64,000 nt of DNA, taken from Dimorphilus gyrociliatus. Its lineage: Eukaryota; Animalia; Annelida. A program made the translations under genes and the position numbers. Shown one piece after another: positions 32,001 through 64,000 of the stretch. Location: contig CAJFCJ010000013.1 of assembly GCA_904063045.1 (NCBI GenBank), forward strand, positions 912,156 through 976,155, written 5' to 3'. Each line of letters starts with the position of its first letter. Position 1 is the first letter of the stretch. Under the pieces are notes generated by a model. It was given only the letters and a program-made list of their open reading frames with translations. It was not told the origin of the DNA and did no database searches.

Positions 32001-35000
32001 CATTAGAGACAATATCACTTTCTGGGAATCCTATTGTGAAAATGTCTGATAATTTTTACAAATTACGCGGTCTTCAACGGATAAATGTGTCTAATACGAA
32101 AATAACGAATCTTTCTAGGCAGTTTCTTGAATTCAATGCCTTACGAGATCTTAACGTTTCTGATAATTATTTGGACGAGTTTCCCAGCTTTCTAAGCAAA
32201 CTGACATCTTTAATACACTTAAACGTATCCGGTAAAGAGATATATCCTTTTCGAGAGAAGCAGGCTTTAACGAAAAAGGATTTTGAAAATTATTTATTGA
32301 GCTTAAATGAACATTGCGTTAATATTCCCAATGTTAGACGTGTCTTTGAAGAGAAGATAATAAATAAAGAATACATAGAAGGAGAACAAATTGAAGAACT
32401 TCACGCCCAAATATTTAAGGAAATGCCTCATATTAGAAAATTTCCAGAGATTGACGACAACAGCTTTCAACGATTAGAAACGCTATTGTTAATGAATCAG
32501 AATTTGTTATCTATAGATCCGTCTATTGTTAAGATAAGTCGGCTAAAGCGTATAGACCTTAGCAATAATCCATGTTTGGAGGAAGTACCAGCTATTAGCA
32601 CTAACGAATTAAGATCAATATCATTAAAAGGCTGCGGTTCTTTGAAAACTCCTCCAAAGGAAATAGTAGCTAAGGGGCATTTTGCTGTTTTAGGATACCT
32701 TAAACGACTCTCTAAAGGTTCAGTAGTTTGTCGAAGAACTAAACTAATGTTAGTGGGTCTAGGAGGAGCTGGAAAGACCAGTTTGATGAAATCACTTATT
32801 TCCGAACAACCCACCAAAACACCTCCTGACGTTACTGACGGTATTGATATCGTTAATTGGGATGTAGGATCGTTAGTCTATTCTCTTTGGGATTTTGCTG
32901 GTCAAACTGTTTATTATAACACACATCAATACTTTTTATCAAATAGAGCCATATATATCCTAGCGTGGAATGTTCGCCTGGGACACGAACACTCCGGTTT
33001 AAAGTTCTGGCTTAGTTCTATTGAATGCCATGCTCCAAAGACACCGGTTTTAGTTGTTGGAACTCATATCGACGAAGTAAGAAACATTTTAAGATATTCT
33101 TTAAAAGTTTAAATTCGAACCTTTATAGATATATACTGTATATATATATATTAATACATTCCTATTTTTCAAGGTTGAAAAATCAGAATTACCGGAAATC
33201 GAACTACAAAGACGTTATACTCAGATTAAAGGATTTTATTACGTATCGTCGTTAACTAATATTGGAATTGATGAACTACGAAACGATTTAATTCAAATAA
33301 CATTGAAACAAAAATATATGGACGAAAAGATACCAAAGATATGGTTAGACTTTGAGGAGATCCTACTAAAGTAGATTTTCTAATACTGTATTCCTATTAG
33401 TGGTGTTAAGCTAATAATTGTTATTTAGATACAGAAATTCCAATTGTAACGTGCTAGAATTTTCAACGATTGCTAAAGTAGCAGAAGAGAAATGCCATAT
33501 CAGCCGAAGTGAACTAGTACAATGTATTGAATTTTTACACGAATTGGGAGCAATACAATACTTCAATAACGAATTCCTAAAGAATAGAATTGTAGTTAAT
33601 CCCCAATGGATTGTTGATGTAATGGCTTGTGTTGTTTCTGTTAAATTAAGCCCCATTGTTGATGGTAAATTCTATCATAAAGATATACGGTCAATTTGGA
33701 AAGATGACCAATTTCCAGAAGATATGCTCAGCTGGTTGTTAAAATTAACTGAAGAATTTGATTTAACATTTTGCCTTAAGCAGGATAAAGCTAACCTGGT
33801 ACCTTGTTTACTACCTGAAAGAGAACCGGAAGTAAGTAAATTCCATTTGAAATATTATATATACATTCACTGATATCATCTTTTTCTTATAGTTTGAATG
33901 GAAAAATCTGATTGAATCGGACGATGAAATCGAAATGAAAATGATATATAAGTTTGATTATCTACCATCCGGTCTATTTAATAGAGCCCAAGTAAGACTA
34001 CATCAATTCTGCGATGAGTCGCTTATATGGAGAAAAGGAATGTTATTGAATAAGAATATACATAGAGCTTTAATGAAACAATTAAAGTAAGCATCAAATT
34101 ACTCTTCCAACTCTCTTTAGAAACTTAATGCTGCGCATAAATTCTCTAGCGATACTACTGTTCTCGTTCGAGCTCAAGGATTAAAGCCCGACAATGTTCT
34201 ATTTTTAGTTCATGAAGTTTTTGAAACGTTAATTGCAGAATCATTTAGCGGTGTGAGATACGATTATAGCATACCTTGTCCAGAGTGTCTTCGATACGTA
34301 ATTAATTTCTCTTGTTATTGTTTAAAACTAAATACTTTAATACTAATCCTTCGCTGTTTAATAGTTTAGTGCCGATCCTTCAATGATACCGGGTCAAAGG
34401 ATTCGAAAAGCAATTGCTCTTAAAGTACCATTTCTGCAATGCGTTGAAAATTTCCATACTATGTCGATAACTCAACTAAGATCTGCTCTACCTCCTGAAA
34501 ATTCGGAAGATTTCGATATTCAACTGCAAAAAAGCGTTAATGAATTGCGTAATATCAAATCAAACCTTTGTTTGAGTATTATCATTATGTACTCGGAATC
34601 GGATTTACCAAAATCCGGCTTAGAATATACAGTAGTCGGTTTACCTATGTTACAGAGAGACCTGAAAAATAAAGGATACGATACGTATGTTAATCAAAAC
34701 AATTTTTTATTATAGAGTGTATAAATCTATTTATCTATTTAAAATAGTAAAACAATTAATGATATGGATAATCTGTCTATGGAAGAGATGATTAGTACTA
34801 TAAAGGAGTCTCAGGTTTAAAAAAAATTTGTAGTTTATAAAATAGAACACGAGAACGCTAATTAAAGAAAAATGTTCCATTTTTTGCAGATTGTTTTGGT
34901 ACTAATTAGCGATGCTTTCGTAAAAAATCAAACAACAAAAAATTTATTCATATACATTAAAAAATTTCTTAATAAGAGAACTCAGTTAATTCTTACTAAT

Positions 35001-41513: not shown

Positions 41514-44500
41514 TTACATTATTAGGCATGCCCGACTTTTCGTCTTTCGATTACCGGACAAAAGCTCCTGAACCATCATCTTCTTAGGAGTTTCGATGGA
41601 TTGATTAGAATCAGTATTCCCTCTTGATTCCAATTTCTTTTCGTTTCTTTTCTCTAAATAGTTGGCGCCTTCAACTGCTATTTCGGCTCCTTTAAATTTT
41701 CCACGGATTTCAACGCTTTTTCTCCTATCTTTTATTTTATCTAGTATACCAATTGAAAATTGTTCATCTTTTGTCTGAATGGGAGTTTGTTCTTGAATAA
41801 CTTCTTTGTTATCTATCAAATTTACACGTAGTTGTTTCTGATGTATATTACAAAGCCAGGCTAATTTTCCATTAGTCATTTGACATTTAGAAAGAGGTTC
41901 AACCGCAGTTCTTTTAGGCTGATTTTTTGCCTCCATATTATTTATAGACGTTAATAACGAATTATAGCAGCTCTCAACGTCCAGCTCTTTATTCTCTTCG
42001 AATACGGATTTGGCGTAATTCAACGCTTTACCAACCATAGCGTCTCCCTCTTGCGTATTGAGAATGAGTAGAGGAATTGCTGTTTGTTTCAATATTAAAT
42101 ACAATTTGGCAAGGTAACCACACCATTTTCTAAACGTATCATCAACTTCGTTACTTTGCCAGTCGATAACCCATTCAATTTTATTGTTTTCCGGTGGAAT
42201 GTGCCATCCCTAAATAGGTAAATGAAACGATATTAGGCGGAGATTATCCAATGATAGAAATAAGCTTACCTCATCGTATTCGCACAAGAAAAAGAAACAA
42301 TATCCCACTATGTCATTGTCCTTTGAGTCGTTTGAATTCCTTTTTAAAAAGTCAATTACTGGTAGACGAGGTAGTTTTCCCTGACAGAAGACTTTGTCAA
42401 AAGAGGATAAATATCTAACAAACTTCCTTTCAGTCAGTTCTAATAGTTCACTAAATTCTTTCTTTTTTGATATAGTGTTATTGGATGATGATTTCTTTGG
42501 TTTATCTTCTTTGTTCTCTATGTAACCCTTAATCAATTCAATTATCTTTTTAGTATCTTCTTCCAAAGAAATCATATCGAATTTAGGATAATCTAATCCA
42601 AGCATCCCGACTTCAGATTTAATCCATCCCAAACCACTTCCAACAATAACGATAATAACTGGTAAACGTAAAGTTAGAGCTGCAAAACGAAATTCCATAA
42701 TGCAGTTTTTCGATGTGACGTACTCTTCCGATACGCATGCAATCACAACTTTAGCCATTTTGAGACCTTCCGCAATATCCTGATAAAGACCAGCTTGACC
42801 AACTTGTTCAATATCCATCCAACATCTAATTCCGGCTTCTTCGAGTTTTGTTTTTAAATCCCTGGGATCAATCCTGCCAAGAGCGGATTCTATCAATTTC
42901 GTTCCTTTTTTTACAGCCTGTCTAGAGTTGCTCCACGAGTAGCTGATGAAACAATGAGGTTGAGCCTGCCTTTTTTCGCAATCGTATTCTTTACAAATAG
43001 ATTTCCTCAAATCTTTCATTTTTGTATCAAAATTCTTAAACTCTTTCATATTAACATAAACCTGAAAATACAAGAAGAGATCGTAAAAAATTGATTCAAG
43101 TCGATAAAAATAACAACAGCATCAGAGCACAAAATTCCAATATCGGGATCCTTTTTCCAATTTTCATTGTTATCAATTAAGACTAATCGTATCTTAGCAT
43201 CAAATTGTTTCTTTGCGTAAAGGAAAAGCTGTTTACAAGTTTCATTACAGACAAATTTATGAGTCATGAAAACCATAATAGTATCCGATTGTTTTAACGA
43301 CATAATCGTCTCTTCAACTTGATTTTCTGATTCTTCGTTGTAGCTCGATCTTTGAAGATTAAATTAAAGGATGATAAGAAAGTCATTTAAAAAAAATTTT
43401 ACGTACACAGACACTTCGGTATCTTCCAAATTTTCTTGTATCATCTCCGGAGTTACAATATCTCCAGATTCGGCAGTAGTTTTATAATCTTCCAAACAAT
43501 AAAGAATAGCAAGATTATTTTTAATAGATGATTTCATCTTTTTAAGATCTCTTAATGAGCTTTGTAGTTGAGAGTCAAAATCTTCATTATTTTCTGGAGG
43601 TAACATATCTAGAGGGAAAGATAATTCAACAGGATTAAATGATAATTTCATTTATCAGCTATTTTAATAATTTTACTTTGTAGTTGATTTAAGGATAAGG
43701 TATGAAAATTATCATAACATTGCATAAATGGTATCTTGAAATCTAAGGCTCTTCGAATTCTCGTAGACGGTAGCATAGATGGTTCGGATAATCCGTGACG
43801 TACGCATTCACTACAAGGAACGTGATAATCGTATTTTACTCCGACAAAAGATTCTGCAATTAGGTTTTCGAATACTTCGTGAACCATAAACAAAATATTC
43901 TCTGGTCGTGGTCCTCGAACTTCAACCAAAACCGTTGATTTGCTATAATCGATAGTTGTAAATATTTTACATCATTTCTATTCATTAAAATGTCGATTAT
44001 ATTGTTACAAACTCTGTTTTTTTAATAAATCCTCTATGGATATTTTTCCTTAGAAGAGAGCCGTCTTTCCATAGTTTCAATTCATCACTGTATTGATGGA
44101 GCCTTACTTGAGCTCTATTAAAAAGTCCGGATGGAAGATAATCGAAATTGTAAATCATTTTCGTTTGAACTTCTTGTTCGCCCAAGGTATCTCCTTCCCA
44201 GAAAGTCTTTATAAGCAAATAAGTCCATTTATATAGTATATATAAAAAAAAAACTATAAATGGCCTACTTCAGTATCAATTGATGGAAGGAGACAAGGAA
44301 TTAAATTAGCCGATCCTGATTTTAAGGGAAATGATAAATCAAATTCTTCCGTTAATCTAATAAGCCAATAGTGCAGTTCGGATGGATAAATATTGGTAGG
44401 CCATACTTTATTTAGGTCACAATGCAACAGTTTTCCATTCTTCAAACGTAAAATTCATAATTAAATAGTCATTATCGAAAAGGAAATTCTCTAATAGACC

Positions 44501-47500
44501 TACTTTTACGGCATTATCATGAACGGAAATGACGCAAGCCATCACATCGACAATCCATTGAGGATTGATGACTACTTTATCCTTTAGAAATTCATTTTCA
44601 AAATGTTGTAGGGTTCCCAACTCGTGTAACAAACGAATCGCTTGAAACGTCTTAATTAAATCGAAGAAAGAGAGAGAGAGAGAGAGAGAGAGATAGAGGG
44701 AAATAGATGATAAATTAATAATTTGGAATTACTAACTAGTTGGAATTTACCTCAAATTTATCATTAAATCCAAACATTGCCCCAAAACCAATAACTTCTT
44801 CCAACGAGAGAAGACTGGTAAAGACTCTGTATCTATTATAAAAGATAACGAAATGGCAAAAGATTACATATGAATTTTTCAATTCAAAATCCAATTTACT
44901 CAATGATTTTATTCTCAAAATCCAACCAAATTTTAGGTATCTTTTCATTCATGTATTGCTGTTGTAGTGTAACTTCAACCATATTATCAACAAGTGTATT
45001 CACACCCTTTAGTAAAGGTTATATATATATATATATTGTATATACTTGTAAAGATGGTACAATAAATCTACATACTTGACCTGTTTTTGATGAAACGTAA
45101 TGGAATCCTTTGATTTGAGGATATCGTCTTTGAAGATGATGGATAGTTAATTCAGCTTTCTCAACCTAAGAGAGAATTGTTTTATTGTAAAATACGGCGG
45201 AGTGGATAAAATTAAAAATGAACTATACTTCGTCTATATGAGAGCCCACAACAAAAATTGGAGCTTTCGGAGCATGACATTCAATAGAACTTAACCAAAA
45301 TTCAAGACCAGCGTGCTCATGGCCTAGCCGACAATTCCATAGGAGAAAATAAACAGCTCTATTCGAAAGGAAAAATTGATGGGTGTTATAATAAACTGTT
45401 TGTCCGGCAAAATCCCAAATTGAATATTCAACTGATTGAACAAGCCACTTCTTTATTGTAATTCCATCAGTAACTGTTGTATTTATAGTATCATGACGAT
45501 CGTCATCAGATTTCTCTTTCATCATTCTATTGATAAGGCTGGTTTTCCCCGCACCTCCCAAACCTACCAACATTAATTTTGTTCTTCTACATTGAGTTGA
45601 ACCTTGTAATAGTCTTCTCATATAACCCTGAATAAATTTTAGACCTTTTACTACAATTTCTCTTGGAGGTGTTTTTAGTGCAGGGCAATTCTTCAATCGC
45701 AAGATTTCTATTGGAAGATGGCAAATTTCGGCGCTAACCTCCTCAAGAACAAAATTATTGGATAGATCTAAGATTTTCAAGGAAACCAAATATTTAATAC
45801 TGCTGTCCAAGACTTGAAAACTTTGATATTGCAATTCCAAAACAGTTAAGCTTTGACAAATCGTATTGTCTTTACACATATTAAATTTTAAATTTGAAAT
45901 TCTGGGTAATTTAGAATATAATCCAGAGCAAAACAGCTCCATCTCTTCCGTTGTCCATGAGTTACTATTCTGTAAAGCGGTTTCTTTAATCAATTCCTCC
46001 AAAGCATTATTATCCAAATTGAACTTGTTAAGATGCTTCCAATGTTGATGTGCTAATTGTCTAACATCATCCGTCAAGATTGATTTATTGATTCTATCCG
46101 GCATATAACCAAAAGCGTTAAATTTGAGTGTAATCAGATTTGATAGACGAAAGATGACCAATGGAAATATACTAAAAACGTTATATGATATAATTAAGAC
46201 CTCTAAATTATTTAGTTCAGCCAATTCGTCGGGCAGAGAATTTATAGGTAGGGAAGATAAATTTAAATATGTTAATCGCTTAAATGCACAAATTATCATT
46301 GGAAATGCTTTTAAAGCAGAGCACTCTGTCACTTCTAAGTGTGAAATTGTTGGTGCTAATGAAATTAGCTCTTGTGGTATATCTTCTATATCGATACCAT
46401 GCAATTTTAACGCTGTTATTGAGCTATTAACAAACGTAGTTAACTCTTCCTTTGGTATATCCACAACTTTCTGATTTAAAGAATGATGAAAATTACAAAT
46501 TATCTTTCGTTCACCTATCTTTATGTATTTTCGTTCGTTTGAGAAATAGGAAAAGCATTTTCTCCATTTTTCACTTGGGGATTCTTCAGACTTATCAATT
46601 TTCTTTGTTGTAGATAAACATTTTATAATCAAAAATGAAAAATAGAATAATAGCTGAGCCATTTCACAAGTACAATCTCTCTATTTGGACGAGGAGAATA
46701 TTTTGATAAAATACGCATCAATTATTTTATCTAATATTACGAAACTTACCATTTCATGATCTTCAAACTTCCAATTAGAAAACACTATAAACGATAAATT
46801 TTCCATTTGGGGACTATATTCTTGAGTCTGACCTGCACTTTTAATGATATGCTTGGTACGATGATTATTGTCCTCTGATTCGTAGCAGAAGGCATACGGT
46901 ATTAGCGTTTTACTTTTTATTATATCCGATAGAAAGGGTAAACATGTATCTCTCAGTTCATTCCTCATTAGAAAACCAATTGGATATTGAGCTACTGTTA
47001 TTAAATCTTTAATACTTCGAGAAAGACGCCCCTTTTTCTCAATGAAGTCTGTTTATGGAGTAAAAAAACAAATAGAGATTCAAATGAGCATAATCTATTT
47101 ATTTACCAACCCCTAGCTAGATTTTTATTTTCTGAATAAGGTTGCGCAACCAACTCGGTAAATCGTTTGTTTATATCCGGTTCACTTAATTTCTTAATAA
47201 CTTCTTTAGGAATTTGTTCGAACGCCATACACTTGATGAACTCTTCCCAATCAAGTTCTCTATCAGTAGTATCTTTTTGTTATAAATAAAAATCAATACG
47301 GCATTTCATTTTGATGAAAGATTAATAATAATAATAAATTGTATACCTATAAAGATATTTTTGCAGTATTCTTTTAATATCAGCAACGACAGTGATTTTA
47401 AATCTACCCATTTGAATTGTTCTTTAAGCCAACAATGGCTTATTTTAAGCTCTTTTTTATCATAACAGATATCACCTATAAAAATTAAATAAGATAGAAA

Positions 47501-50500: not shown

Positions 50501-52242
50501 AAAGGGAAGAGATGAAATCTATTATAATAGGATGTTAATATTATACTTTGGTTATCATATATTCTACGATATTGCTACAAGCATCGATAATTCTGTTCTG
50601 ATCAAAATTTTTACATATCGGTACTATTATCAAACATTTATCAGTAGATATTAGAGGTAGGAATTCCTGGAATGGGTAAGAAACAAGAATTTTAATATGT
50701 AATATATGAAAAGTATATCCTCAACCTCGGAACATTCGTAATAAATGGCCGAGTCTATTTCGAAAGAGCGAAATGAATCGAAATCTTGAAATTTAATTTC
50801 AGACTTCAAAAGATAATGTTTTAGGTCAAATCTAGGCCATTTTCTTTCCTCAAACGGTCCTTCATACATTGATCTAAAGTGTACAATGACAATTTTTTTC
50901 TCCCTCACAGATCGTTTTTTGTGAGAAGCAGTAAGATCTTTTATAAAAGAAAAAATAAACGGAAGAGTTTGTCATTAATCGCTGAAGTTTAAAAAAAGTT
51001 TTCGATTTCTTCGTACCGTATCGTTTCGTTTCGCTTTTTATTGTAACTAATTCCAGAGGATCAACATATGGGTCAAGAGATCTCATATTTACGGTAAATT
51101 TTAGCATTTCTCGACTGGGAATAGCTACAGCATCTAAATTCAGATACTGTTGAAATAAATGATAAAATTAAATTGTATAATTGAATGAATATCTAACCTT
51201 GTTTTTACTCCAAGTCGAAGGACTTCTCATTATGGAACTAAGTTCGAAAAGGGTCCAGGAAGCTAGCTTTTCGCAGTTTGAAAGGTGAATCTAGAAAATA
51301 ATTAGATTAAATTTAAGAAAAACAATATCAATTTTCTAACATTTGCTATCAACATTTTTGAATTATTCTTCACTATCCAATAAATAGCCCAATCAGTTAA
51401 TGAACTACAGCCATGTAGTTTAAGTTCAGTTAATTTCGTATTTGCCTGTTACAAGAAAATATTTGTTTTAAATAAGAAAAGCATACCAGTTAGATAATAA
51501 GTTTTACTTGTGATTCTTCATCGTTTGGGAGTGCATAATAGAAGAATAAATCGTTTATAGTTGAAAGATTCGTCACGTTGACTGTGGTAAAACTCATCCT
51601 CAATAGTGAAGTAGTTCTAAGCAAATTCTTGAGAAAAAGATAAATATAAGATTTGAATTGATTTTTCGCAGAGACTACTACTCGACTTACATGTGGATTT
51701 TCGCTTAAAATTGCGTGAATACACACTTTCGATGACGAAAATATAACAGGGTTTGTTAGCAAACTATCAGTTATTTCTGCTGCTGCAAACTCCTCTGGTT
51801 GTTTCGAAGGAAGTGTCGAAAATTTTTGTGGTGTAATTCGTGTTTTAAGAACACCGTGTTGTTTAATCCCTTTTGATTTCGTTTTATCTTTTTTTACTGC
51901 TTCTTCGGGAGTAGCAAGTATTACATTTTCACCTTCTTCAGTCGGTTTGTTACTTTCCTTTTCTTCAACAGATTGTTGTGTATTTGCACCTTCATCTTCT
52001 TCGGAAGGTTTGTTCGCTTCCTCAGGAACAGTTTCCTTTTTCTGATTTGAATCTTCTTCGGAAGGTTTGTTCGCTTCCTCAGGAACAATTTCCTTTTTCT
52101 GATTTGAATCTTCTTTGGAAGGTTTGTTCGCTTCCTCAGGAACAATTTCCTTTTCCTGATTTGAATCTTCTTTTGCCGATTCAATACCTTCAGCCTCCAA
52201 TTTATCGGTAGTAGGAGGAGCAGGACCTTCTGATGCATCCAT
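41514..52242 (-). CDS. Giant ROCO protein B, paralogue of A with the same domain order; multi-exon
   Basis: ATG at 52242 (MDASEGP...). LRR + Roc (KLMLVGLGGAGKTSL, WDFAGQ, VGSHID) in ORF 45223..46662; COR LHELGTLQHF...INPQWIVDVM and YNFDYLPSGLFNRAQVRL; TIR HCFISYSWSN...CIMEFRFA; MBT-like IAVGQKFQVM...LDWEEFI; ends KSRACLIM*. Confidence 0.8.
44669..44692 (+). repeat. (AG)12 microsatellite forming the pyrimidine tract of a ROCO B intron
   Basis: Perfect dinucleotide run; reads (CT)n on the coding strand near the acceptor. Confidence 0.9.
51995..52170 (-). repeat. About 3 copies of a 57-bp coding tandem repeat (19 aa, EDSNQ[K/E]KE[I/T]VPEEANKPS[E/K]) in ROCO B exon 1
   Basis: GGAAGG anchors at 52003, 52060 and 52117 (period 57); units nearly identical. 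Confidence 0.95.
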
Positions 52243-52999
52243 TCTTATATTTATAGTATGGTTTTTAAGGTATTCCAAAAAACACTGACTTTAATCCAAG
52301 AAAGGAGTAATTACAATAAAAAAACAAGATAAATTGCTTCAGCAGAATCTATAAAAATATGGTTTCGATGTATTTTTTTTTAATTGCTTATATTCTTAAA
52401 CCATTCTATACAATTTACAATACGCAATATCATTTTCCATCATTTGTATTATATAATAATGTATCAACTGTGGAAAAACAACAAAATTTAGATTCTATTA
52501 ATATACTTTAACAGTGAAAATAGCTGTGTGAGGCCATTAACCAGGCTAGTTACCCTTAGTAACATACAATAGATATTGAACGTAGCAGTTCATATATTTC
52601 GTATGTGCAGTTTATAAATGTATATATATTAGTGTTTATAGGAAATTACTGCTGATTGAATTGAAGAAAAGTACATATTATAGTTATTTACAGATTAGGA
52701 TAGGTTGAAGGATGAGCGTACTTTCCAATCTAATCCCTAAACATTACCCCTATTCGCCTAAGTCGTAATATCAATAACTTTCCTTTACAATATTAGCTAT
52801 AACATTTACGCCGATCCATATTTCTTGTATTTGTTAAGATCAAAAATAAGTAAATTTCATAAATATTTATTTAAATCTTTCAAAAAGTATTCAAATCATG
52901 AAAGAAATAGGATAATTAGCAAAATAGTAAATACTGGTGTTGGTGGCGCCATCTAGCTAGTTGCCCAGTGCCAATATCATTCGCATTTCACATCATATA

Positions 53000-53626: not shown

Positions 53627-56560
53627 TACTGTGTGGAAAAAAAGAAACAAAAGTGTCCAATATTTATTATTGTTTTGCAGAAGGCCTACAGCTGTTATTT
53701 GTCCTATTTTATTTATAAGGAAATTGTTACAGTATTTTTCATTAGTTCTTTAGAATAAATGTGTAAATTTACCACAATCGTTTCTTTATCACCTTATCAG
53801 CGACTTGCGCGCTTGATAAATGGATTTCGTATCATTAACTGACCAGTTGATCATCTGCAGGTCCGCGCATAAGTGCTACAATCATTATAATGTTATCAAA
53901 TGACACGTAATATTTTCTTGAGTATGTTGAAGTGTGTGACCTGTTGAAAGATTTTTTCTTTCCTATCGATTCTTCTGCATGAATAAAGTTTAGTTGTTAA
54001 AAATCAATTATCTAATATTTAAATGATTTGTAGAGATTTTTATCCAATTGCTTATCCTCTCCCCTCCCCCCTCCCCCCCACCAACAGCGAATTTTATTAT
54101 ACAAAATCACACAAACAAACACTATTTCGTTCTCTCCGCCTATTTTTTCTGTGTCTCTTGCTCTTTTTCTTTTCCTAATTCTCTCCCCATCGCTGTCGCT
54201 CATCTCCCAAAGATTTATCTTTTCCCTAAGAACATTTTCTACGGCTTTATCTTCTGAGTAATTAGCTCTCTCCAGTGGTACTTCCGTTCCTTTGAATTCT
54301 TTTCTTTGCACCTATCTTACCAACAGCTTGATCTTTTCCGGATCTATCCATCATTTTTTTGTTTATCCAAAATTTTTCCTAGCCGTTAAATAACTTTTTA
54401 AGGTTTATTTTCTCGTCAAAGACTTTTATTTTACGACCATATTAGGATTTTTGTAAAATTAAATCAAAAAAGAAAGATTGCTTTTTTTGGGAAAGTATCA
54501 CTTTCGAGCATTCTGAAATTTATTGAAGTTCGGAAGGATTTATGATTGTTCTAATGGGGCGAAACTTTCATCGTCGAATATTTGTTAATTCTAGATCAAA
54601 GCGTACAATGGAACCTTTTCGCTCTAAGGATACACGGTACATTAACACCTCAATTGTCAGATGGCGCTAAGATAAAACTGTAGATGACGTTACGATAAAA
54701 GTGGAGGCGGTATATTCTTAAAATTTAATTGTTTAATTTAACTTTATTAAGGTATTATATGGATTATGAAGCATATATAAGACTAAATTTATCAAGTATT
54801 TTATCGGATTATTCTTATAATAGTGTTTAAATAATAGGATTAATGCAAGATTATCAATTTAACCAAACCGTTAGGTAACTTATATTATCACTCTTTTCGG
54901 GGTTATATTTCGGGCGTGTAAGCCTTATTAAAGATTAAAATAGATCATTGTTTATTGTTGTAGAATATACATGTAACTTTAATTCTAATTATTTTAGAAA
55001 TGGATACTTCTATATTAAAATTTTGTTCTTTTTTCCAAGAGAATGTTCTCTGTTTTTTTTTAAAAATTCTCCTCCAATCATCCGAGTTAATCATTTTTAA
55101 TTTTGATTTATATATAAAAAAAATTTCCTGGATTAGAGCATTCATTCTGGATATCTTCGTTCCTCTTCAATTCGTTAAATTTATAGCAGTTAAATGACGT
55201 GAAAACTATGATAGATTTTGATAAATGATTTAGGAAAATAGGGTAATTTCTTAATCAATAAGATAATCTTTAAATCTTTATCGTCCAACTAGGCACAAGT
55301 TTTTTATGTGAATATGATATATATAACAAAAAAAGATATATTCGCATCACTCTAAAGTAGAATACTTGGAAATTACACTATTTTATTATAATCGCTAGGT
55401 CAGTGAAGTTTTTATCAGTCTTTTAATACATTAACCTGTTGAGTATTTCTATGTGATAATTTTCATCTCGAAAGAGTGGAAAAACCTTATCTCTTTTATG
55501 AAACTTGTTAAAATAATTTATCCTTAGGGAATCGAAGAGCTTTCGACCTGTTCCGCGATTTATTTATACTGCCATAGGTTTAGTTATAAATGGCATGATG
55601 TATAAATGGGACAAGTCCAACTAATAATAAATTACCAGGATAGAAACATAATCTTAGAAATTAGATTATTATTAATTTAAAGCGTATTGAAGACAATTGT
55701 TGTGCATTTTATTCATATTATATTGTAATACATTAAGACAAATAGTGACATTTGCTTAAAAAAAAGGTCATATTATTTCAATAAAATTTACTCTGATTTT
55801 AGCTTTGAAATGAGACAAAGTGTTCTTCAGAAAGAAGATCATAGATGAGAAGAGTGTACAATATTTTTTTTTATTGCGGCATCATACAGTTCTGATGTCT
55901 CTGTGATATCATTTCTAATAATATATTGCATATGTATACCTGTAGTATTTCACAATATACGTTTTGATATACCATCAGTATATCTGTTCATTGATACTTT
56001 CAATTTGTTTTTTATTTGTTTGTACTTGTTGTCATTTAAAGATTTACATCTCTTCTATTTCTTATATGATCTTGTATTTGGATTAAATATCTATTAGAGA
56101 ATGAGAAAACTTGTCTCGTAGCTATTATTGTCTTAAAATAGCAAAATAATAATTTTTTATCTCTTTTTTTTCTAAAATAACCTTTTTTCCAAAAGTAGAC
56201 TAAACGTTAAGAATAATTTTTAAAATACAAGCAAAATAGTAGAAATATTAAATCATTTAAAAGAAATTAAATACATATTGATTGATGCTTCTTGTCTTCG
56301 TTTTCTTCATCTTACGTTTAACTTTTTATATATTAAACGCAGAAAAATGTTTTCATCATTATTAACTGCAACAGCAGAAAACACGGATATCGGATCCGAA
56401 TGAAGAAGCTTCGATAACGGTAGCAGAGGGAGGCCACCACGTGCATCAGACTCATATGAAGTTGAATACAATACAACAAATTTGCTAGTAGAGAAGTATT
56501 TATCTGGATAGGATAGTCATCTACCGTTGATCTACACAGGTAGAATATAATTATATAGGC

Positions 56561-59392
56561 TTATTTTGGGCGATGACGAAGGATACAAGAGTATTTTGCC
56601 AATAGCTCAACATTCTCGCTATAAATAGATTTTTGATTGAGTTGGGCTTGAGATAAATTATGACCTAAATCTGTTAAATGCCTATCTAAATTTCCGAATA
56701 CAATTTCATGAGGAGAGACGTTTTTACCATTTATTATCCTTTTATTAATAGCATCTTGAACTAGAAACAATATTTGTAACCATATCTGTTCACCTCTCAT
56801 CTCTTTAATAATACTAATGATTTCGTTACAGACTTCATTCGTCTTTCTTTCAATAATTCTGTTTTTATCAACTCTAATCCTTACTAGAGATATTCCTAAT
56901 ATCCCTAAGAATTTGTCGAGTTCCATAGGATTAATATCTACATAACAGCCGAGAAGTACCCTCTTTGGCACACCAAAAGTTGAGAAATATTTTTCAAGCA
57001 AAATCGGAGCTATTTCCGATACTTCTAAACTTTTTATTGAATAAAGACTTGAAAATTGAGAAAAAAGATCAATCACTACTAAAATATACTTATAACCATC
57101 CGCTGTATAATTCATTGGACCAATAAAGCCTATTCCAATCAATTCGAAAAGGTCAATCGGGGAGGCAACTGCATCTGATAAACCAGATTCGCGAAACAAT
57201 TGATAATTATGACGATATATATCACGAGAAATATCTTTTGAAATTTTACATTGGATTTCTTTATCCTCTTTTGACTTTTTATGGAAATTAGTCTCTAAAT
57301 CAATAAAATGATTGAATCTACCTTCGAAAAAAGTCTGAGCAATTTCACTCAAATTCACCCTTTCTTGAGAGTTTGGTACATGGCGTATGGTGAAATCAAA
57401 CTGAGATAGGATACTTGTCCATTTGTTTTCTATACGACTATCTGAACGTTCTCTAAAAATTCGAGATATATTATAAATATCGGTATACAAATAGAACGGA
57501 CATTTGTTTAAGTAATTCTGAAATCTTTGTATTCCCCAACAGGCCGCTAAGCTTTCTCTTTGATACAAACTATATTTGCTCTCTCTATGGCTAAGGGTCT
57601 TCGACGCATAACAAATAGAGAATAATTTCATTTTTCCATCTTCGTCATCCCTAAACTCTTGTTTCAATACAGCACTAAGAGATATTTCCGAGCATGTAGT
57701 CATCAAATGAAATCTTTTATCAAAATCAGGAAATTTAAGAGTTGGACAGTTGAGAATCCTCTCTTTTAGAATATGAAAATTTAGTTTGGCTTCTGGTGAC
57801 CAAACAAGACGAGCTGTTTCAACGTGATTTTTAATAAGACCATACAAAGGTGAAGAAATTTCGGCAAAATCTTTAATAAACTTACGATAGTAACCGCAAA
57901 TACCGATTGAACTTATCAAAGTACTGTGAGATTTGGGTAACTTAACCCTACGAATCAATTCAAGTCTATCTCTGTCCATTTCTATTCCATCAACGCTAAT
58001 CATATGCCCTAAAAATTTTACATACGGCTTGGCAAACTCACATTTAGATGACTTAATCTTTAATTTAAATTCGTCTAGCCTACGAAATAGCCTTTCTAGC
58101 GCTATTAAATGATCTGAAACATTTTTGCTAAATACGATAATGTTACCGAGAAAATTTAAGCAGAAATCTCTCATATCGCCCAATACAAACTCATTCATCA
58201 AATACATGAAATATGCTGCGGCATTTGTCAAACCGTAGGGCATTCTATTGAACTCAAAAAGGCCAAAAGGCGTTAAAAAAGCCGTTTTAGGTTTATCCAT
58301 TTCCCTTATTTTAACATGATGATAAGAGCTTGCCAAATGAATAATTGAGAAAATCTTATTCCCTCCTAAATGATCGAAAAGATCCTCTGGAGAGGGTAGA
58401 GGATATTTATCTCTTACAGTCATTTTGTTCAATCGGCTAAAATCAATACACATAAGTGTCGTAAAGCCTTTCCTTCTAATAAATGCTAGACGAGATGCCC
58501 ACTGAGATCGACTAGGCCTAACTATACCTGCTTTTACTAATTGTTTTATATGTTCTTTGCATTCTCTTTTCTTTCTGCCGTTCATATAATGGGGAATTTC
58601 TCGAAAAGCTAGAGCACCTTCTTTTAAGGTTATTTTCATTGGAGGAAAATCTGTATCACCAACGTCGTATTGACCTTTCGAAAAAACTGTCGAATACCTA
58701 CGCATAATATACCAGAATTTTTGCTCGTCACTTGAGTTTAATACCTCTAAACCTATTCTTAGAGGAGGCAAAGATATCGAATTATCAATCGGCTGTGGGT
58801 TTATATAACTTACTCCCGAAATAAAGGGTGAATCGTCATCTGATCTAACTGACATGGGTATCGTTGCATTATCAATTACTAAAACACCGTTGGAAAAATC
58901 TAGAGTAACTCCATATTTTTCCAAGAAATCCAGACCAAGTATGCAAGGCAAATGAGTTTGTTGTCGAATAAGAAACGTGTGACCTACGAGATAACCGTTC
59001 AATTGTAGAATTATGAATATTTCACCTAAACTGTTCATTTCATTCGCCGTTTCAATTTCCTCCACTTTCAGACTATCTTGCCTAATTCTCTCCTCGTAAC
59101 CAAGACGTCTAACAATGTCTATTGATACATAGGAAAGAGGAGATGAGCTCAAGATCTTAACGTTAAACTGAACATTTTGGCAAGATCCTCTTATCATATT
59201 ATACGCTGAATCAATGCTAATATTTGAAGGAGAGCTATCTGTTAAACTAACTGTTTCTTCTCTACTAGATTCTGCTCTACCGTATACTCGTTCACCAGAG
59301 TCTGACTCACCTCGAGCGTCAGCCCAATCTTCATCAAATGCCACCGAGTCCCTTTCAGACGAGTTCTCAAATTTGCCATTATGCTCTGCCAT
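56561..59392 (-). mobile_element. Ty3/Gypsy pol-derived intact 943-aa ORF (PR-RT-RNase H-IN order) with catalytic residues substituted; probable domesticated gene
   Basis: CILGLDFL (PR); PSRSQWASRL...MCIDFSRLNKMT..DKYPLP and GLFEFNRMPYGLTNAAAYF (RT); YASKTLSHRESKYS (RNase H); GYKYILVVIDLFS and STFGVPK (IN). No stops or frameshifts; no gag or LTR recognised. Confidence 0.85.
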
Positions 59393-62020
59393 AGCCAGTA
59401 ATATTTACTATTTTTCTTGCTCTTTCTTCAATTTTCTTAACCAAAATTCTAAAATCCAAGAGACGAATAAGTCAGCTCTTTAAAGGGTCTCCTTTTATCT
59501 CTTGAACTCTTCAGTACAAATTCCAATAATCTTCTGATGTACAAATGCAAGTATTACTTTTATAATTGATAGTTGAAGCGACCTCTAGATGTTTTCTTAG
59601 CCAGTAGACAAAATATTGCTTTTATCTTTTCTTTTTGACATAAAAAAGAAATATTGAGTGTAAAGCTAGGAAATAACTCTTAGTTTTTCACTATTGCTAT
59701 TTTAAGCAGGTCAGAAGGTATACTATAAACCATTGTTCATAGAAAAATCTCTCTGTTCTCCGCTAACATTTCCATTAAATGTTGAAAAGAGAGAGAAAAT
59801 TGAATTTCAAGATATTACATTAGGCTTATACTCAAATAGATAATTTATAGCAAAAAAGAAGGAAAGAGAGAGAGAGAGTTACATCATCGACAATACGCTG
59901 TATTAAATTATCTTAAGCAGTAAATCTTATGTTTGTCTACTTCTCAACTAGGCCTATTAATTATGTAAAATAATCCTCAAAGAAAAAAGAGAAAAGAAAA
60001 GGAACATGTAAAATGGACGGAAAAATTGTTCTTTTTTTTTCTTTTTACACAATTTATACAATTAATCTTATATCTTGAACGATTTTACGAACTTCGAATA
60101 AAAGATCTATAAGTCATTCTCCTACTTTACATCTCTCTCTCTCTGTTTGCTAATTAATTTCAGACTTAATGAATTACTGAAAATAGACTAATAATCTTTC
60201 TCAAACGCTTAGAAAAATATAGTAATAAGAAAGATGTTATTAATGCGACAAAACAACAAACTTCCCTTGTTTATTGTTATTCTTAATATTTATTCAAAGA
60301 GTAACTTTTCATTATTTTTTTTTTTGACGTTGATCTTTAACCTCTTTCAACGATTAGCCATTGTTCTCACTGTTAACTACCACGTGATAGGAGATCTCAT
60401 TTGTAACAATAAATTGTATAGAATATATTGTATATTACATTGCATATAAGAAATCTTAACAGTTCACTAATCCCCAATAAACACAAAAAAATCAAATTGC
60501 TTAATACACCTGCCGATTTTTACTTTATTAATTTGTGTAAAGTTGTTACGTAACAATGACTAAATGAATTGTTAAAAGTGTAGTGACTGTCAACTTTTTA
60601 TCTTCCGTTATGTACTAGCAAAAAAAAAGAGATCAGTAAACAAATAGTAGAACATAAAAAAATAAACAAGCTCAACTATTCCCCACGGTGCTTATCCTTG
60701 AACAAATTAATCTTAACGTATGATAGAAAGGTTAAAGGAGAGGAAAGGAAAGGAAAGAAACGTAAATTCATCTTCAATAGCAATAGAAATTGTTTTAGTG
60801 GTCTCTAGACTGAAATTTTTAGTTATTATTTTTCTATAGGCGCTCTTCTTTCTCTGATTATCATCTCTTCTCCACACTCAATATCTATTTCTTAAAATTA
60901 CTCATTTTACATAAAGTAGAAGCGTTTATAAGAGTATTATATTTAAAAGGAATTTGGTAAAGTTGTGTTATCCTTTTAATATTTTATCTTTCTTTCCTTA
61001 AACTATTCCGAAAGTATTCTTAGCAATCTTAGTGCGTACTCTACGGTTAATTTTACGATCTTTTGTAGGAAGCCATCTCCAACAGACTCTCGGAAACGGC
61101 GAAGAGGTCCTTAACCTCTCCCTCTCTCCCGCTTTAAACTTTAAGTTTAAACATTTTTTTACTTTTATTTTTCAACATCTAAGATTACTTCCAGAAGGAA
61201 TCCAAGGCCGTGATAACTTGGATTTAAGTACAACGATATGATATTGTTCTTCATTTCATTTTCGGAAGCCTATTATAATCTAATTTCGATATTAATTATT
61301 ATCTTAATAACTTGAGAGGTCAAAAATATTTCCATCTCTCAAATGAAGATCCTAAATTTAATGAAATTGTTCTGAATGTGCATACATAATCATGAAAAGC
61401 ACATGGAGGGTATAGGCTGCAAGTCAATGTTAATTTTTTAAACTATTATCGTCTGTATTGAGCAAAAAAGTTTCAAATTTTGACAAATATGTCAATTAAA
61501 ATGAATAGGCAGCGCTATCTTGACTTTAAATTAGTTTGAACGAAGTAAAATGAAATATTAGTTTGACAATATGGCGGCATACACGTGTTTTTTGTTTTGG
61601 ATGAAATTTGGTCAAAAACAAGCGAAATTTGATTTTTAAAATTATGCAACTGCTGAATAATAAGCAAAAGAAACTTTTGGAAGTTTCAAAAAATAAAATA
61701 TATGTATTTTGATAAATTGACCTAATTTGTATTAGTAAAACTATAACGAACTTAAAAAAAATGCAGAGATAATAGGCCAATTTAGCATAAAAAATTGAGT
61801 AGTGTTACGCTTTTTGTAAAAAAGTATATAAGGAGTAGGCGAAATCACGTAAATTATTTGTGAATACGCCGTATAACAATGAGTTTGAAAAAGTTATTGT
61901 CAAAGTTAGTAATTGGGACTACCTGGGTGCTATCCCCAAAAAGTTCTTACTTTATTTTGTTTACTAGTAATATCTATAGTATTAGCTTGTAGAATATAAG
62001 TTTTCGTTTTTTTTTTCTAG

Positions 62021-64000
62021 TAACTTTGAAGTGCCTGGTATAAAGATTTTACATATTAATGATGTACCAACTTACGTAAAAAGAAGAAGGTCGGTGCCTA
62101 GAAAAAGTCACTTTAAAACATTATCTACCGAGGAAGGTAACTTTCAGTTTATTTTTTTTATGTCATTACGCTATGTTTTTTTATTGTTTAACAGGCGCCG
62201 CGTCATGGCGTGGTAAAAAACGTAATAGGCCAAAGAAAAAGCCCCCGGAAACGGTGCAACAAGGGACGGCAACAAATTCAGCAACATCTAAGGCTAAAGG
62301 CAAGTAATTATTAAGTATTTTATGAACTTATGATAATTTCTTTTTCTGAACAGGCAACATGGTTGGCCTACCACGTGGTAACGCGGATTCTACTCAATCA
62401 ACTACCACAGCACCAAATAACGTACCAAAAGTTGTAGAAAGACTTGAAAACATTGTTGCAGAAGATTTAAGGGTGCCTAGCGTTAAAGGTAAAAATTAAA
62501 TATTTTATTGATGAAGCATTATTAACTTTAACTTTAAAAAAAGTCGAAAACGCATTCTTTTTCAAATTATACAATATAATTAATATAATTTGTTTTTTTT
62601 ATTACAGCGGCAAGCAAGCTTCACGATAAAGAACCTAATGATAGACCAAATAACCAAGGAAAATCTAGTAATTCGGTTACGGAACAAGCGACTGTTAACG
62701 CAATAGGCAAGCTTTGGCAATTGCTTTTCATTGAAAATTATCTCATCTATTTGATTTTACAGCGTTCGGAGGGCCATGTTCTACAGCAGGTCAAAACAAA
62801 GAAGTGAAAAAGCAACAAAAACCCCTAAGATCGATTCTAAAAAGAGCCAAACCGAATATTACATGCAAGCATTTTCAAATTATTCAGTACAATTATATAA
62901 TTTTTACTTTTTATTACAGCAACCGAATTACCATGTAGTAATGTAGATAACAGTGAAGAAAAACGTAGTGACCCAACTATAACAACACCTGTACACTATA
63001 TTACAGGTAAGCACTCGAAATTTATCAACTATTTCATATAACTATTTTATACAAACTAAATAATATTTTTATAATACAGTAGTCCAAGCACCGCGTTGTA
63101 CGGGAGATTTCTATAAACAGCGACAAAAATTGCCGATGAGCGGAGGAAAACCAAACGCCCCGATTAGATTCTTACACAGAATAGGCAAGTGCTTACTAAT
63201 TATTTCAAGTAATAGTACAATTTGAACTTTTTTATAGTGAATCCATTACTAGTCTGTAGTACATCTGCAAACGAACATTGCCTTGAAAACTCTTACAAAT
63301 TACAAATTAATCATGGCAAACGAAGGGTATCATGGGCAGTACCATTGGCAAATTTTTCGACAGGTAAATATTTACCAGTTTTTCATGTTTATCTCATGAT
63401 GTTTTTTTTTATATCAAATTACAATTCTTTAATGCAGATCTAAACGAACGTACTGATAAAGGACCAAACAATATACCGGACAGAACTGGAAAACCTAATG
63501 AATCGACTACCATGACAACGGGACCACACACCGTAGGCAAGTATTTACAAATTATTACAAGCAACTATCTTTACTTAATATTTCCTAATATAGTTATCAC
63601 CGTATCCGATTTAAACGAAGGTCCAAATGTACCCTCTAATATAAAGTCTAACAATGCATCAAATAGAACAGAGAGGCTTGATAAACAGATTGCTACAGGC
63701 AAATATTTACATATTATTAAAAGTCAATTACATAACCTATATTTTACAGTGCCGGCTTCTAATGCAGATCTAAATGAACATGATAGTAATGCTCCCAACA
63801 ATATACCAAACAGACCAGGAATTCTTGATAAACCAGTTGCAAATAATGCGACACCTTACGCTACAAGTAAGTATTTAAACATTATTTCAAACAATTACGT
63901 AATCTTGTCTTTTTCATACAGTAGTCGAATTTAAACGTGACACAATTTCAAATGAACATGTACCTAGTACACCTACAGCTAATAAATTAGCATCAAATGC
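62021..64000 (+). CDS. Partial uncharacterised low-complexity (N/T/P/K-rich) protein built from short phase-1 symmetric exons; continues beyond the window, 5' end uncertain
   Basis: Exons 62195-62299, 62354-62488, 62608-62706, 62763-62864, 62920-63006, 63080-63184, 63238-63363, 63438-63536, 63594-63698, 63750-63866 and 63922- are all stop-free. All ten complete ones are 3n long, with pyrimidine-rich YAG acceptors. The later exons are related repeats (DLNE...PNN[I/V]P). Confidence 0.7.

What the first reader, a model, noticed from the sequence alone, without database searches (positions are those of the whole stretch)
56561..59392. Probable domesticated Gypsy pol: 943 open codons with every enzyme's active site broken
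Seen versus the Ty3/Gypsy consensus: protease D(S/T)G reads ILSSSPL; RT motif A LDL reads IHL; RT YxDD reads FLGN (58143-58154); RNase H TDAS reads TTCS; integrase first Asp (IDF) reads IGF and second Asp (SDxG) reads LGCY. The integrase HHCC finger and gag are not recognisable, and a new acidic disordered N-terminus is present. Structural motifs are nevertheless kept and there is no stop or frameshift. A neutrally decaying copy with this many substitutions in AT-rich DNA would be expected to contain stops. Known: mammalian RTL1 is a comparable exaptation. Inference: an invertebrate host gene using dead PR/RT/RNase H/IN folds, for example as a nucleic-acid binder or a dominant-negative retroelement restriction factor.
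Basis: partly seen in the sequence, partly recalled or inferred. Interest (0 to 1): 0.8.

Follow-up and report, generated by a model that had tools for sequence, protein, structure and literature searches.

The report
Domesticated dead Gypsy pol gene
A small marine worm keeps one intact, apparently transcribed gene made from a retrotransposon's whole enzyme polyprotein with every active site knocked out, and a second species keeps it at the same chromosomal place under strong selection, so it is a host gene with a new non-enzymatic job.

Summary
Window 56561-59392 on the minus strand is one 943-codon ORF with the Ty3/Gypsy pol order: protease, RT, RNase H, integrase core. It has lost the protease Asp, all three RT Asp, the first RNase H Asp and both integrase Asp.

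The domestication reading is strongly supported.
- The gene is single-copy in a 78 Mb genome that holds dozens of intact Gypsy elements, which are only 34-43% identical to it.
- It has no LTR, gag or env remnants around it.
- A 944-aa, 65%-identical orthologue lies in a second species in the same gene order, with the same dead RT motifs.
- Synonymous sites between the two are saturated (pS 0.70). NG86 dN/dS is about 0.13 overall and 0.03-0.08 in the RT/RNase H core.
- A unique 14-nt motif and a TATA box upstream are conserved in both species.
- Contigs from two studies cover only the gene and a roughly 850-nt 3' tail, which looks like a transcript.

Function is inferred only. The most likely role is a non-catalytic nucleic-acid-binding scaffold built on the RT/RNase H core, which is unusually basic. 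The rival is a dominant-negative inhibitor of the resident Gypsy family.

The closest known cases are mammalian RTL1 and monotreme RTOM1-3. This one arose independently, keeps the whole pol and has no gag.

The parts
56561..59392 (-). Complete intronless ORF, 943 codons plus stop: the dead-pol gene
   Evidence: Only full-length copy in the genome.
59210..59392 (-). Residues 1-61: acidic N-terminus, modelled at low confidence and read as disordered; poorly conserved
   Evidence: pLDDT about 30. Net charge -10. Raw pN/pS 0.90.
58844..59209 (-). Residues 62-183: retropepsin-like domain. D-S/T-G replaced by L-S-S at 59144-59152; the ILG-D-F-L motif is kept
   Evidence: 29% identity to the resident element's protease, E 1e-11. 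pLDDT about 90. Raw pN/pS 0.44.
57803..58765 (-). Residues 210-530: RT fingers, palm, thumb and connection. Catalytic Asp replaced by H352 (58337-58339) and by G416-N417 within FLGN (58142-58153). The strictly conserved finger Arg (aligned with HIV-1 R72 from memory) is L313
   Evidence: Foldseek TM 0.87-0.89 to solved RTs. Raw pN/pS 0.12.
57368..57802 (-). Residues 531-675: RNase H-like domain. First Asp replaced by T566; catalytic Glu and second Asp kept
   Evidence: Raw pN/pS 0.17.
57158..57367 (-). Residues 676-745: shortened linker where the integrase HHCC zinc finger used to be
   Evidence: Alignment gaps against active pols. Low pLDDT.
56678..57157 (-). Residues 746-905: integrase catalytic-core fold. 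D,D,E reads G755, G815, E
   Evidence: tblastn to the resident element's integrase, 27-30% identity, E 1e-22. phmmer to PFV integrase, E 3e-4. Motifs. Raw pN/pS 0.41.
59576..59589 (-). Conserved upstream 14-nt motif TCTAGAGGTCGCTT, unique in the genome and identical in the orthologous locus
59555..59566 (-). Conserved TATA-box element ATTATAAAAGTA. The RNA-like contig's 5' end at 59519 lies about 40 nt downstream
55706..56560 (-). Probable 3' UTR of about 850 nt, with AATAAA at 55708-55713 just before the contig end
   Evidence: Contig coverage at the same depth as the ORF in run X1. Sequence. No ORF of 80 aa or more there.

Best explanation
SHOWN. This is a single-copy, intronless host gene derived from the pol of a Ty3/Gypsy element. 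The donor lineage still lives in this genome and is probably the 'Dingle' family described for the annelid Dimorphilus gyrociliatus. The insertion lost its LTRs, gag, any env, the integrase zinc finger and the integrase C-terminus. The protease, RT, RNase H and integrase active sites were disabled, and the RT dNTP pocket was taken apart as well. The RT and RNase H changes and the second integrase Asp are identical in the two species, so they predate the split; the first integrase Asp is still present in the other species. Since the split the gene has stayed at one chromosomal place under purifying selection, strongest on the RT/RNase H core. It has its own conserved TATA-box promoter.

INFERRED (about 40-45% of my weight). 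The protein works without catalysis as a nucleic-acid-binding scaffold or clamp. The RT fingers-palm-thumb plus RNase H-like core, which is very basic, holds RNA or an RNA/DNA duplex. The protease-like and integrase-core folds, which evolve faster but are still constrained, serve as protein-contact modules. The acidic, probably disordered N-terminus is a new tail.
For: - Single copy. DNA search of the whole 77.9 Mb assembly finds only this locus plus a short 3' fragment. More than 48 other pol matches are only 34-43% identical, and many are intact.
- No element remnants. There are no flanking direct repeats. tblastn with the resident elements' ORFs hits nothing outside the ORF in 50-64 kb.
- Orthologue. 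P0001 is 944 aa, 65% identical over 98% of the length, with 4 gap positions.
- Synteny. The two genes upstream of it have their best, and for one its only, matches in this genome on the same contig, in the same order and on the same strand.
- Selection. pS 0.70 (saturated), pN 0.21, NG86 dN/dS 0.126, and 0.03-0.08 in 100-codon windows over RT/RNase H. Raw pN/pS is 0.12 for RT and 0.17 for RNase H, with bootstrap upper bounds of 0.16-0.24.
- Comparison with neighbours. The RT core is 86-87% identical while the neighbouring host genes are 51% and 61% identical.
- Neutral decay is excluded.
- Dead residues shared by both species: G-N for D-D, T for the RNase H Asp, L313, S319.
- Phylogeny. The pair is sister to the genome's own Gypsy clade (SH-like 100), with a long stem (0.76) and short tips (0.08, 0.12).
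- Promoter footprint. The 14-mer and TATA element are conserved although synonymous sites are saturated, and the 14-mer is unique in the genome.
- Transcript-like coverage. Runs X1 and X3, from two studies, cover 55706-59519 at depth about 20 and 3-10. The flanks are at 0-2.6, while the DNA run X2 covers everything.
- Fold kept. Mean pLDDT 80.5; TM 0.87-0.89 to solved RTs. 38 of 57 RT columns conserved in active pols are kept.
- For binding. The RT/RNase H core has net charge +25 and +23, above all 118 active-type cores compared (median +13, maximum +22).
Against: - Only two species carry it in the databases searched. The age and breadth of the gene are therefore unknown.
- dS is saturated, so dN/dS values are rough.
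- Expression rests on contigs from runs whose library type is not on record. The strand, the transcript ends and the existence of the protein are not shown.
- Several Arg conserved in active RTs (R269, R313, R319, R397) are lost. So the retained positive charge need not lie in the original nucleic-acid cleft.
- Nothing here measures binding.
- The PR-like homodimer prediction gave no verdict.
Confidence: 0.8

Rival explanations
1. Same domesticated gene, different job. It acts as a dominant-negative or decoy against the resident Gypsy (Dingle-like) elements. It would co-assemble with their Pol through the protease, RT or integrase interfaces, or compete for their RNA and primer, and so poison replication. 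This would be analogous to gag-derived restriction factors.
For: The gene derives from the same lineage as elements that are still intact and numerous in this genome. All oligomerising folds of pol are kept while catalysis is lost. The protease-like and integrase parts evolve faster than the core.
Against: The RT/RNase H core is under very strong purifying selection, not the diversifying pattern usual for restriction factors. Identity to the resident pols is only 34-43%, which is low for co-assembly. It is unknown whether the second species has such elements. The PR-like dimer prediction gave no verdict.
Confidence: 0.15
2. A decaying or non-autonomous Gypsy relic whose long ORF survives by chance or through recent insertion.
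For: It is pol-derived, and it sits in a genome with many Gypsy copies.
Against: It is single-copy with no LTRs. A syntenic orthologue is intact after saturating synonymous divergence. Simulation gives stops in 98% of copies after only 2% neutral change.
Confidence: 0.02
3. A still mobile, very low-copy element whose pol works with unorthodox catalytic residues or is mobilised in trans.
For: Active TE pols also show low dN/dS.
Against: All three RT Asp and the strictly conserved finger Arg are gone in both species. There are no LTR, gag or PBS-like parts. The position is fixed, with a conserved host-type TATA promoter.
Confidence: 0.02

Closest known systems
Mammalian RTL1 (PEG11), a domesticated Metaviridae gene
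   Same: Single-copy, intronless host gene from a Ty3/Gypsy element. It keeps protease plus structurally conserved but likely inactive RT and RNase H domains and is under purifying selection (PMC11011659).
   Different: RTL1 is built around a capsid (gag) domain and lacks integrase. The worm gene has no gag and keeps the integrase core. They arose independently: the worm gene is sister to the worm genome's own Gypsy clade. In the worm gene the protease Asp is also lost.
Monotreme RTOM1-3, retroviral RT-derived genes
   Same: RT-derived ORFs that lack all three catalytic Asp. They are conserved between two species under purifying selection and are transcribed; function is unknown (PMC9514029).
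   Different: They derive from an endogenous retrovirus and are RT only, in a tandem triplet inside a host intron. Here the whole pol (PR-RT-RH-IN core) of a Gypsy element is kept as one gene in an annelid.
Integrase- and protease-derived vertebrate genes (GIN1, NYNRIN, KRBA2, SCAND3, ASPRV1)
   Same: Pol-derived domains of Metaviridae or retroviruses reused as host genes, often with the ancestral activity lost (PMC3670739).
   Different: Each keeps a single pol domain or a pair of them, often fused to host domains. None is reported to keep the full PR-RT-RH-IN array.
Dingle (Dinophilidae Gypsy-like elements), the resident LTR retrotransposon family
   Same: Closest relatives by sequence. Shared lineage-specific motif variants include Y-H-H in motif A+, C-L-N before motif C and Y-Q-K/R-E in RNase H. 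The family is described in PMC7854359.
   Different: Those elements are multi-copy and carry gag, intact D-S-G, D, D-D, D-A-S, HHCC and D,D,E. The paper reports LTRs and an env for them. The dead-pol gene has none of these.
Prp8 (functional analogy only, from general knowledge)
   Same: A host protein whose RT-like, endonuclease-like and RNase H-like folds have lost catalysis and serve as an RNA-holding scaffold.
   Different: Prp8 is ancient, pan-eukaryotic and derived from a group II intron. No homology or shared function is shown here.

Membership tests
Autonomous Ty3/Gypsy (Metaviridae) LTR retrotransposon | Pol domain order PR-RT-RNase H-IN with homology to Metaviridae | tested here: met
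Autonomous Ty3/Gypsy (Metaviridae) LTR retrotransposon | Flanking LTRs, and gag upstream of pol | tested here: not met
   No flanking direct repeats. No gag, env or other element ORF matches outside the ORF. The same holds for the orthologous contig.
Autonomous Ty3/Gypsy (Metaviridae) LTR retrotransposon | Catalytic residues of PR (D-S/T-G), RT (D, D-D), RNase H (D,E,D) and IN (D,D,E) | tested here: not met
   L-S-S; H and G-N; T,E,D; G,G,E
Autonomous Ty3/Gypsy (Metaviridae) LTR retrotransposon | Multiple dispersed copies | tested here: not met
   One full copy in 77.9 Mb
Retroelement-derived domesticated host gene | Single copy at a fixed locus, with an orthologue in conserved gene order in another species | tested here: met
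   Only two species are available.
Retroelement-derived domesticated host gene | Purifying selection on the protein after immobilisation | tested here: met
   dN/dS 0.126 overall and 0.03-0.08 in the RT/RNase H core. Raw pN/pS bootstrap intervals lie below 1 for all folded domains. Neutral simulation.
Retroelement-derived domesticated host gene | Own regulatory region and expression | tested here: inconclusive
   Conserved unique motif plus TATA box. Gene-restricted contig coverage in two runs of unrecorded library type. No stranded reads, CAGE or protein data could be examined.
Retroelement-derived domesticated host gene | Demonstrated host function (phenotype) | not testable with these tools
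   Needs knock-down or knock-out.
RTL1/SIRH family | Metaviral capsid (gag) domain and common descent with mammalian RTL genes | tested here: not met
   No gag. The gene groups with the worm's own Gypsy clade.

The most novel reading that the evidence does not exclude
The worm has turned a complete but enzymatically dead Pol into a pol-derived restriction factor. The protein would enter or mimic the replication complex of the resident Dingle elements, through protease, RT or integrase oligomer interfaces or by capturing template and primer, and would block reverse transcription or integration. Known retroelement-derived restriction factors come from gag or env, so a pol-derived one would be a new class.
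Probability: 0.15. Interest if true: 0.8.

Novelty: new variant of a known kind. Interest (0 to 1): 0.62.

Why it matters
Host genes made from retroelements are mostly gag, env, or single pol domains, and nearly all well-documented cases are vertebrate. Here a whole pol array (protease, RT, RNase H, integrase core) has been kept as one protein with every active site disabled. Its RT/RNase H core is more conserved than neighbouring host genes.

I found no report of this architecture. I also found no report of a pol-derived domestication in an annelid.

It offers a compact, tractable case for asking what a dead reverse transcriptase fold is good for. The published genome paper for the probable host species reports stage-specific RNA-seq, CAGE and ATAC data. 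The case can also test whether pol, like gag and env, can be turned against its parent element.

Tried and rejected
- Splicing. A 62-nt 'joint' at 56666/56729 in runs X1 and X3 looked like a possible intron. It has no splice-site ends, and it matches a 271-nt duplicate of the ORF's 3' end on contig C129 that carries the same 62-nt deletion. It is not splicing.
- More orthologues. A second word search with the conserved RT/RNase H core alone found nothing above 45% identity. The second cluster member, P0210, is the same species as P0001 and differs by 1 nt.
- Big representative search. I did not run it. The operators marked it costly, and the main claim does not rest on absence of relatives.
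- Mixture-model ML tree. It did not finish in time, so the tree cited is FastTree LG+CAT. Rows covering fewer than 380 of the 431 core residues were left out, as were identical duplicates; 120 rows remained.
- PR-like homodimer prediction. No verdict, score 0.23 against a mark of 0.32. This is neither support nor evidence against.
- Bacterial-type promoter and terminator scan. It does not apply to a eukaryote.
- Poly(A) tail on the orthologous contig. The A-run at its end is followed by other bases, so it is a genomic A-run and not evidence of a tail.
- Pfam on the two syntenic neighbour genes gave no family.
- Literature searches found no report of this gene.
- Findings search by words returned nothing.
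Full report
**1. What is there**

Between 56561 and 59392 there is one open frame of 943 codons on the minus strand. The plus strand is full of stops. The frame is closed about 4 codons upstream of the ATG.

Pfam recognises RVT_1 (residues 313-465) and the two RT-associated RNase H models (531-665). An integrase core match (764-816) is only faint. Against solved structures the best sequence matches are Ty3 Gag-Pol/RT (7q5b, 4ol8; E 1e-53 to 1e-55) and CaMV RT. PFV integrase matches residues 748-902 at E about 3e-4. tblastn with ORFs of the genome's own Gypsy elements also matches the protease part (29% identity, E 1e-11) and the integrase core (27-30%, E 1e-22). The domain order PR-RT-RNase H-IN is therefore real.

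**2. The dead sites**

I aligned the protein with Ty3, six intact pols from the same genome and nine pols from elsewhere.

| Site | Active elements | This protein |
|---|---|---|
| Protease | D-S/T-G | L81-S82-S83 |
| RT motif A | Asp | H352 |
| RT motif C | D-D | G416-N417, within F-L-G-N at 58142-58153 |
| RNase H, first Asp | Asp | T566 |
| Integrase, first Asp | Asp | G755 |
| Integrase, second Asp | Asp | G815 |

The RNase H Glu and second Asp, and the integrase Glu, are kept. The zinc-finger region between RNase H and the integrase core is cut from about 190 residues to about 65. There is no gag.

Of the 57 RT columns that are at least 85% conserved in 50 active-type pols, 38 are kept. 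The lost ones include the three Asp and a finger Arg conserved in 50 of 50 (L313). From memory, that Arg aligns with HIV-1 R72, which contacts the incoming dNTP. So the dNTP site was taken apart while the framework stayed.

An AlphaFold2 model built on a 52-sequence alignment has mean pLDDT 80.5. The PR-like domain (62-183), RT/RNase H (210-672) and the IN core (746-905) are confident. Residues 1-61, 184-205, 675-720 and 921-943 are modelled at low confidence. The RT/RNase H part superposes on CaMV, Ty3, XMRV and MLV RTs with TM 0.87-0.89.

**3. Not a transposon copy**

The assembly is 77.9 Mb in 349 contigs. A DNA search finds this locus alone, plus a 271-nt copy of the ORF's last 75 codons and the start of the 3' UTR on contig C129.

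A protein search finds at least 48 other pol matches, many with open frames of 1000-2000 codons. They are only 34-43% identical.

No direct repeats flank the ORF. No gag, env or other element-ORF similarity exists anywhere in 50-64 kb outside the ORF. The surroundings are host genes: ROCO GTPases with TIR domains, a sulfotransferase and an RA-domain gene.

**4. Orthologue, synteny, selection**

The word-based protein search returned one outstanding hit, P0001. It is 944 aa and 65% identical over 98% of the length, with 4 gap positions. Every other hit is at most 37% identical. It lies on a 9-kb contig from another sample (L035). A second sample of the same species differs by one nucleotide.

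Upstream of it on the same strand are two genes. One has its best hit in this genome at C13:985136-986179 (51% identity; it belongs to a local gene family). The other has its only hit at C13:984491-984877 (61% identity). Both lie on the minus strand, upstream of the dead-pol gene (C13:968716-971547), in the same order. The locus is therefore orthologous.

The two coding sequences are 68% identical at the nucleotide level. NG86 gives pS 0.70 (saturated), pN 0.21 and dN/dS 0.126. In 100-codon windows over RT and RNase H where dS could be corrected, omega is 0.03-0.08.

Uncorrected pN/pS is biased towards 1 by saturation. Even so, the values are:

| Domain | Raw pN/pS (95% bootstrap) |
|---|---|
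| RT | 0.12 (0.09-0.16) |
| RNase H | 0.17 |
| PR-like | 0.44 |
| IN core | 0.41 |
| N-terminal tail | about 0.9, not distinguishable from neutral |
| C-terminal tail | about 0.7, not distinguishable from neutral |

The RT core is 86-87% identical, which is more than either neighbouring host gene.

The orthologue has the same G-N, T566, L313 and S319. It has N instead of H at the motif A Asp, L-P-S at the protease site, and G at the second integrase Asp. It still has Asp at the first integrase position. The RT was therefore already dead in the common ancestor, and the protein has been conserved since.

Active TE pols also show low dN/dS, so that number alone would not decide the matter. What decides it is the combination: a fixed orthologous locus, a single copy, dead sites shared by both species, and conservation.

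In a simulation, 2% neutral substitutions per site already introduce a stop in 98% of replicates, and 35% give about 39 stops.

**5. Origin**

A FastTree LG+CAT tree of 120 RT/RNase H cores places the two dead proteins together (SH-like 100). They are sister to the genome's own Gypsy clade (SH-like 100 for the joint clade). The stem is long (0.76) and the tips short (0.08, 0.12). The mixture-model run did not finish. Lineage-specific motif variants are shared with those elements.

Several facts fit the published Dimorphilus gyrociliatus genome, whose dominant TE is the Gypsy-like family 'Dingle' (PMC7854359): the assembly size, the count of about 350 scaffolds, the abundant Gypsy family, and an earlier scan note calling the organism a small marine worm. 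I treat this identification as probable, not proven. That paper does not mention domestication.

**6. Regulation and expression**

Upstream of the ATG the two species share a 14-nt motif (59576-59589). It occurs nowhere else in the genome, and one-mismatch matches are no more frequent than for the control pattern. About 10-17 nt after it both share an identical ATTATAAAAGTA element (59555-59566), followed by further conserved blocks. Because synonymous sites are saturated, this is a phylogenetic footprint of a promoter.

When public runs were laid on 55300-61200, the DNA run that may be the assembly's source covers everything evenly. Run X1 (2017, another study) covers 55706-59519 at depth about 20 and the flanks at 0-2.6. 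Run X3 covers only 55835-59396. X1's 5' contig end lies about 40 nt downstream of the TATA element. Its 3' end lies just past an AATAAA at 55708-55713.

This is what an unspliced mRNA of about 3.8 kb with an 850-nt 3' UTR would give. However, the library types are not on record and contigs carry no strand. I therefore call expression probable, not shown.

**7. How it most likely works**

- Shown: no catalysis is possible at the RT or protease sites, and the RNase H and integrase sites each lack essential carboxylates.
- Shown: selection is concentrated on the RT/RNase H core.
- Shown: that core has net charge +25 (+23 in the orthologue), higher than all 118 active-type cores compared (median +13, maximum +22).
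- Inferred: the protein acts by binding, most likely RNA or an RNA/DNA duplex held in the former polymerase cleft. The PR-like and IN-core folds would act as contact modules.

The main rival is a dominant-negative or decoy action on the resident Gypsy elements. It is attractive because the parent family is alive in the genome. It fits poorly with the very strong constraint on the core and with the low identity to those elements. A homodimer prediction for the PR-like domain gave no verdict.

**8. Comparison with what is known**

RTL1 carries PR plus likely inactive RT and RNase H, but it is built on a capsid domain and lacks integrase (PMC11011659). RTOM1-3 of monotremes are retroviral RT-only genes that lack the three Asp, are under purifying selection and are testis-expressed (PMC9514029). 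The chordate catalogue of Metaviridae-derived genes lists gag-, protease- and integrase-derived genes (PMC3670739).

I found no report of a gag-less, full-pol, all-dead domesticated gene, nor of one in annelids. I therefore rate it a new variant of a known kind.

**9. Limits**

- Only two species are available.
- dS is saturated.
- Expression evidence is indirect.
- Function is untested.
- The species name is inferred.

Noticed in passing
G000:C129:15354-15622 (locus L002 1441-1709), matching window 56458-56667 and 56729-56789: A 271-nt duplicate of the dead-pol gene's last 75 or so codons plus the first 100 nt of its 3' UTR. It is 92-95% identical and carries a 62-nt deletion. Contigs with exactly this deleted form appear in the RNA-like runs X1 and X3 at depths similar to the gene itself, so the fragment may be transcribed within another unit.
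   Followed up: partly
whole genome; loci L006-L034: Dozens of Gypsy pol copies have uninterrupted frames of 1000-2075 codons, several near-identical to one another. They form at least two subfamilies (L006/L007 type and L031-L034 type). The family looks recently active.
   Followed up: partly
window 51994-52172 (inside the minus-strand ORF 51490-52278): Three tandem copies of a 57-nt unit, 95-100% identical, inside a 262-codon ORF with no Pfam match.
   Followed up: no
window 31802-33112, 42210-43073 and 45223-46662: LRR-Roc (ROCO) and TIR-domain exons cluster in the window. The upstream syntenic anchor gene of the orthologous contig (L035 2-1063) has paralogous matches within these ROCO genes, so the dead-pol gene sits at the edge of a ROCO gene cluster in both species.
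   Followed up: partly
L035 1271-1642 and G000:C13:984491-984877: A 123-aa ORF, single-copy in this genome and 61% identical between the two species, with no Pfam family. It is a conserved orphan gene that serves as the synteny anchor.
   Followed up: no
window 59393-64000 versus L035 1643-5392: The spacer between the anchor genes and the dead-pol gene is 12.9 kb here but 3.75 kb in the other species. The extra DNA includes the symmetric-exon array noted by other readers at 62137 onward.
   Followed up: no
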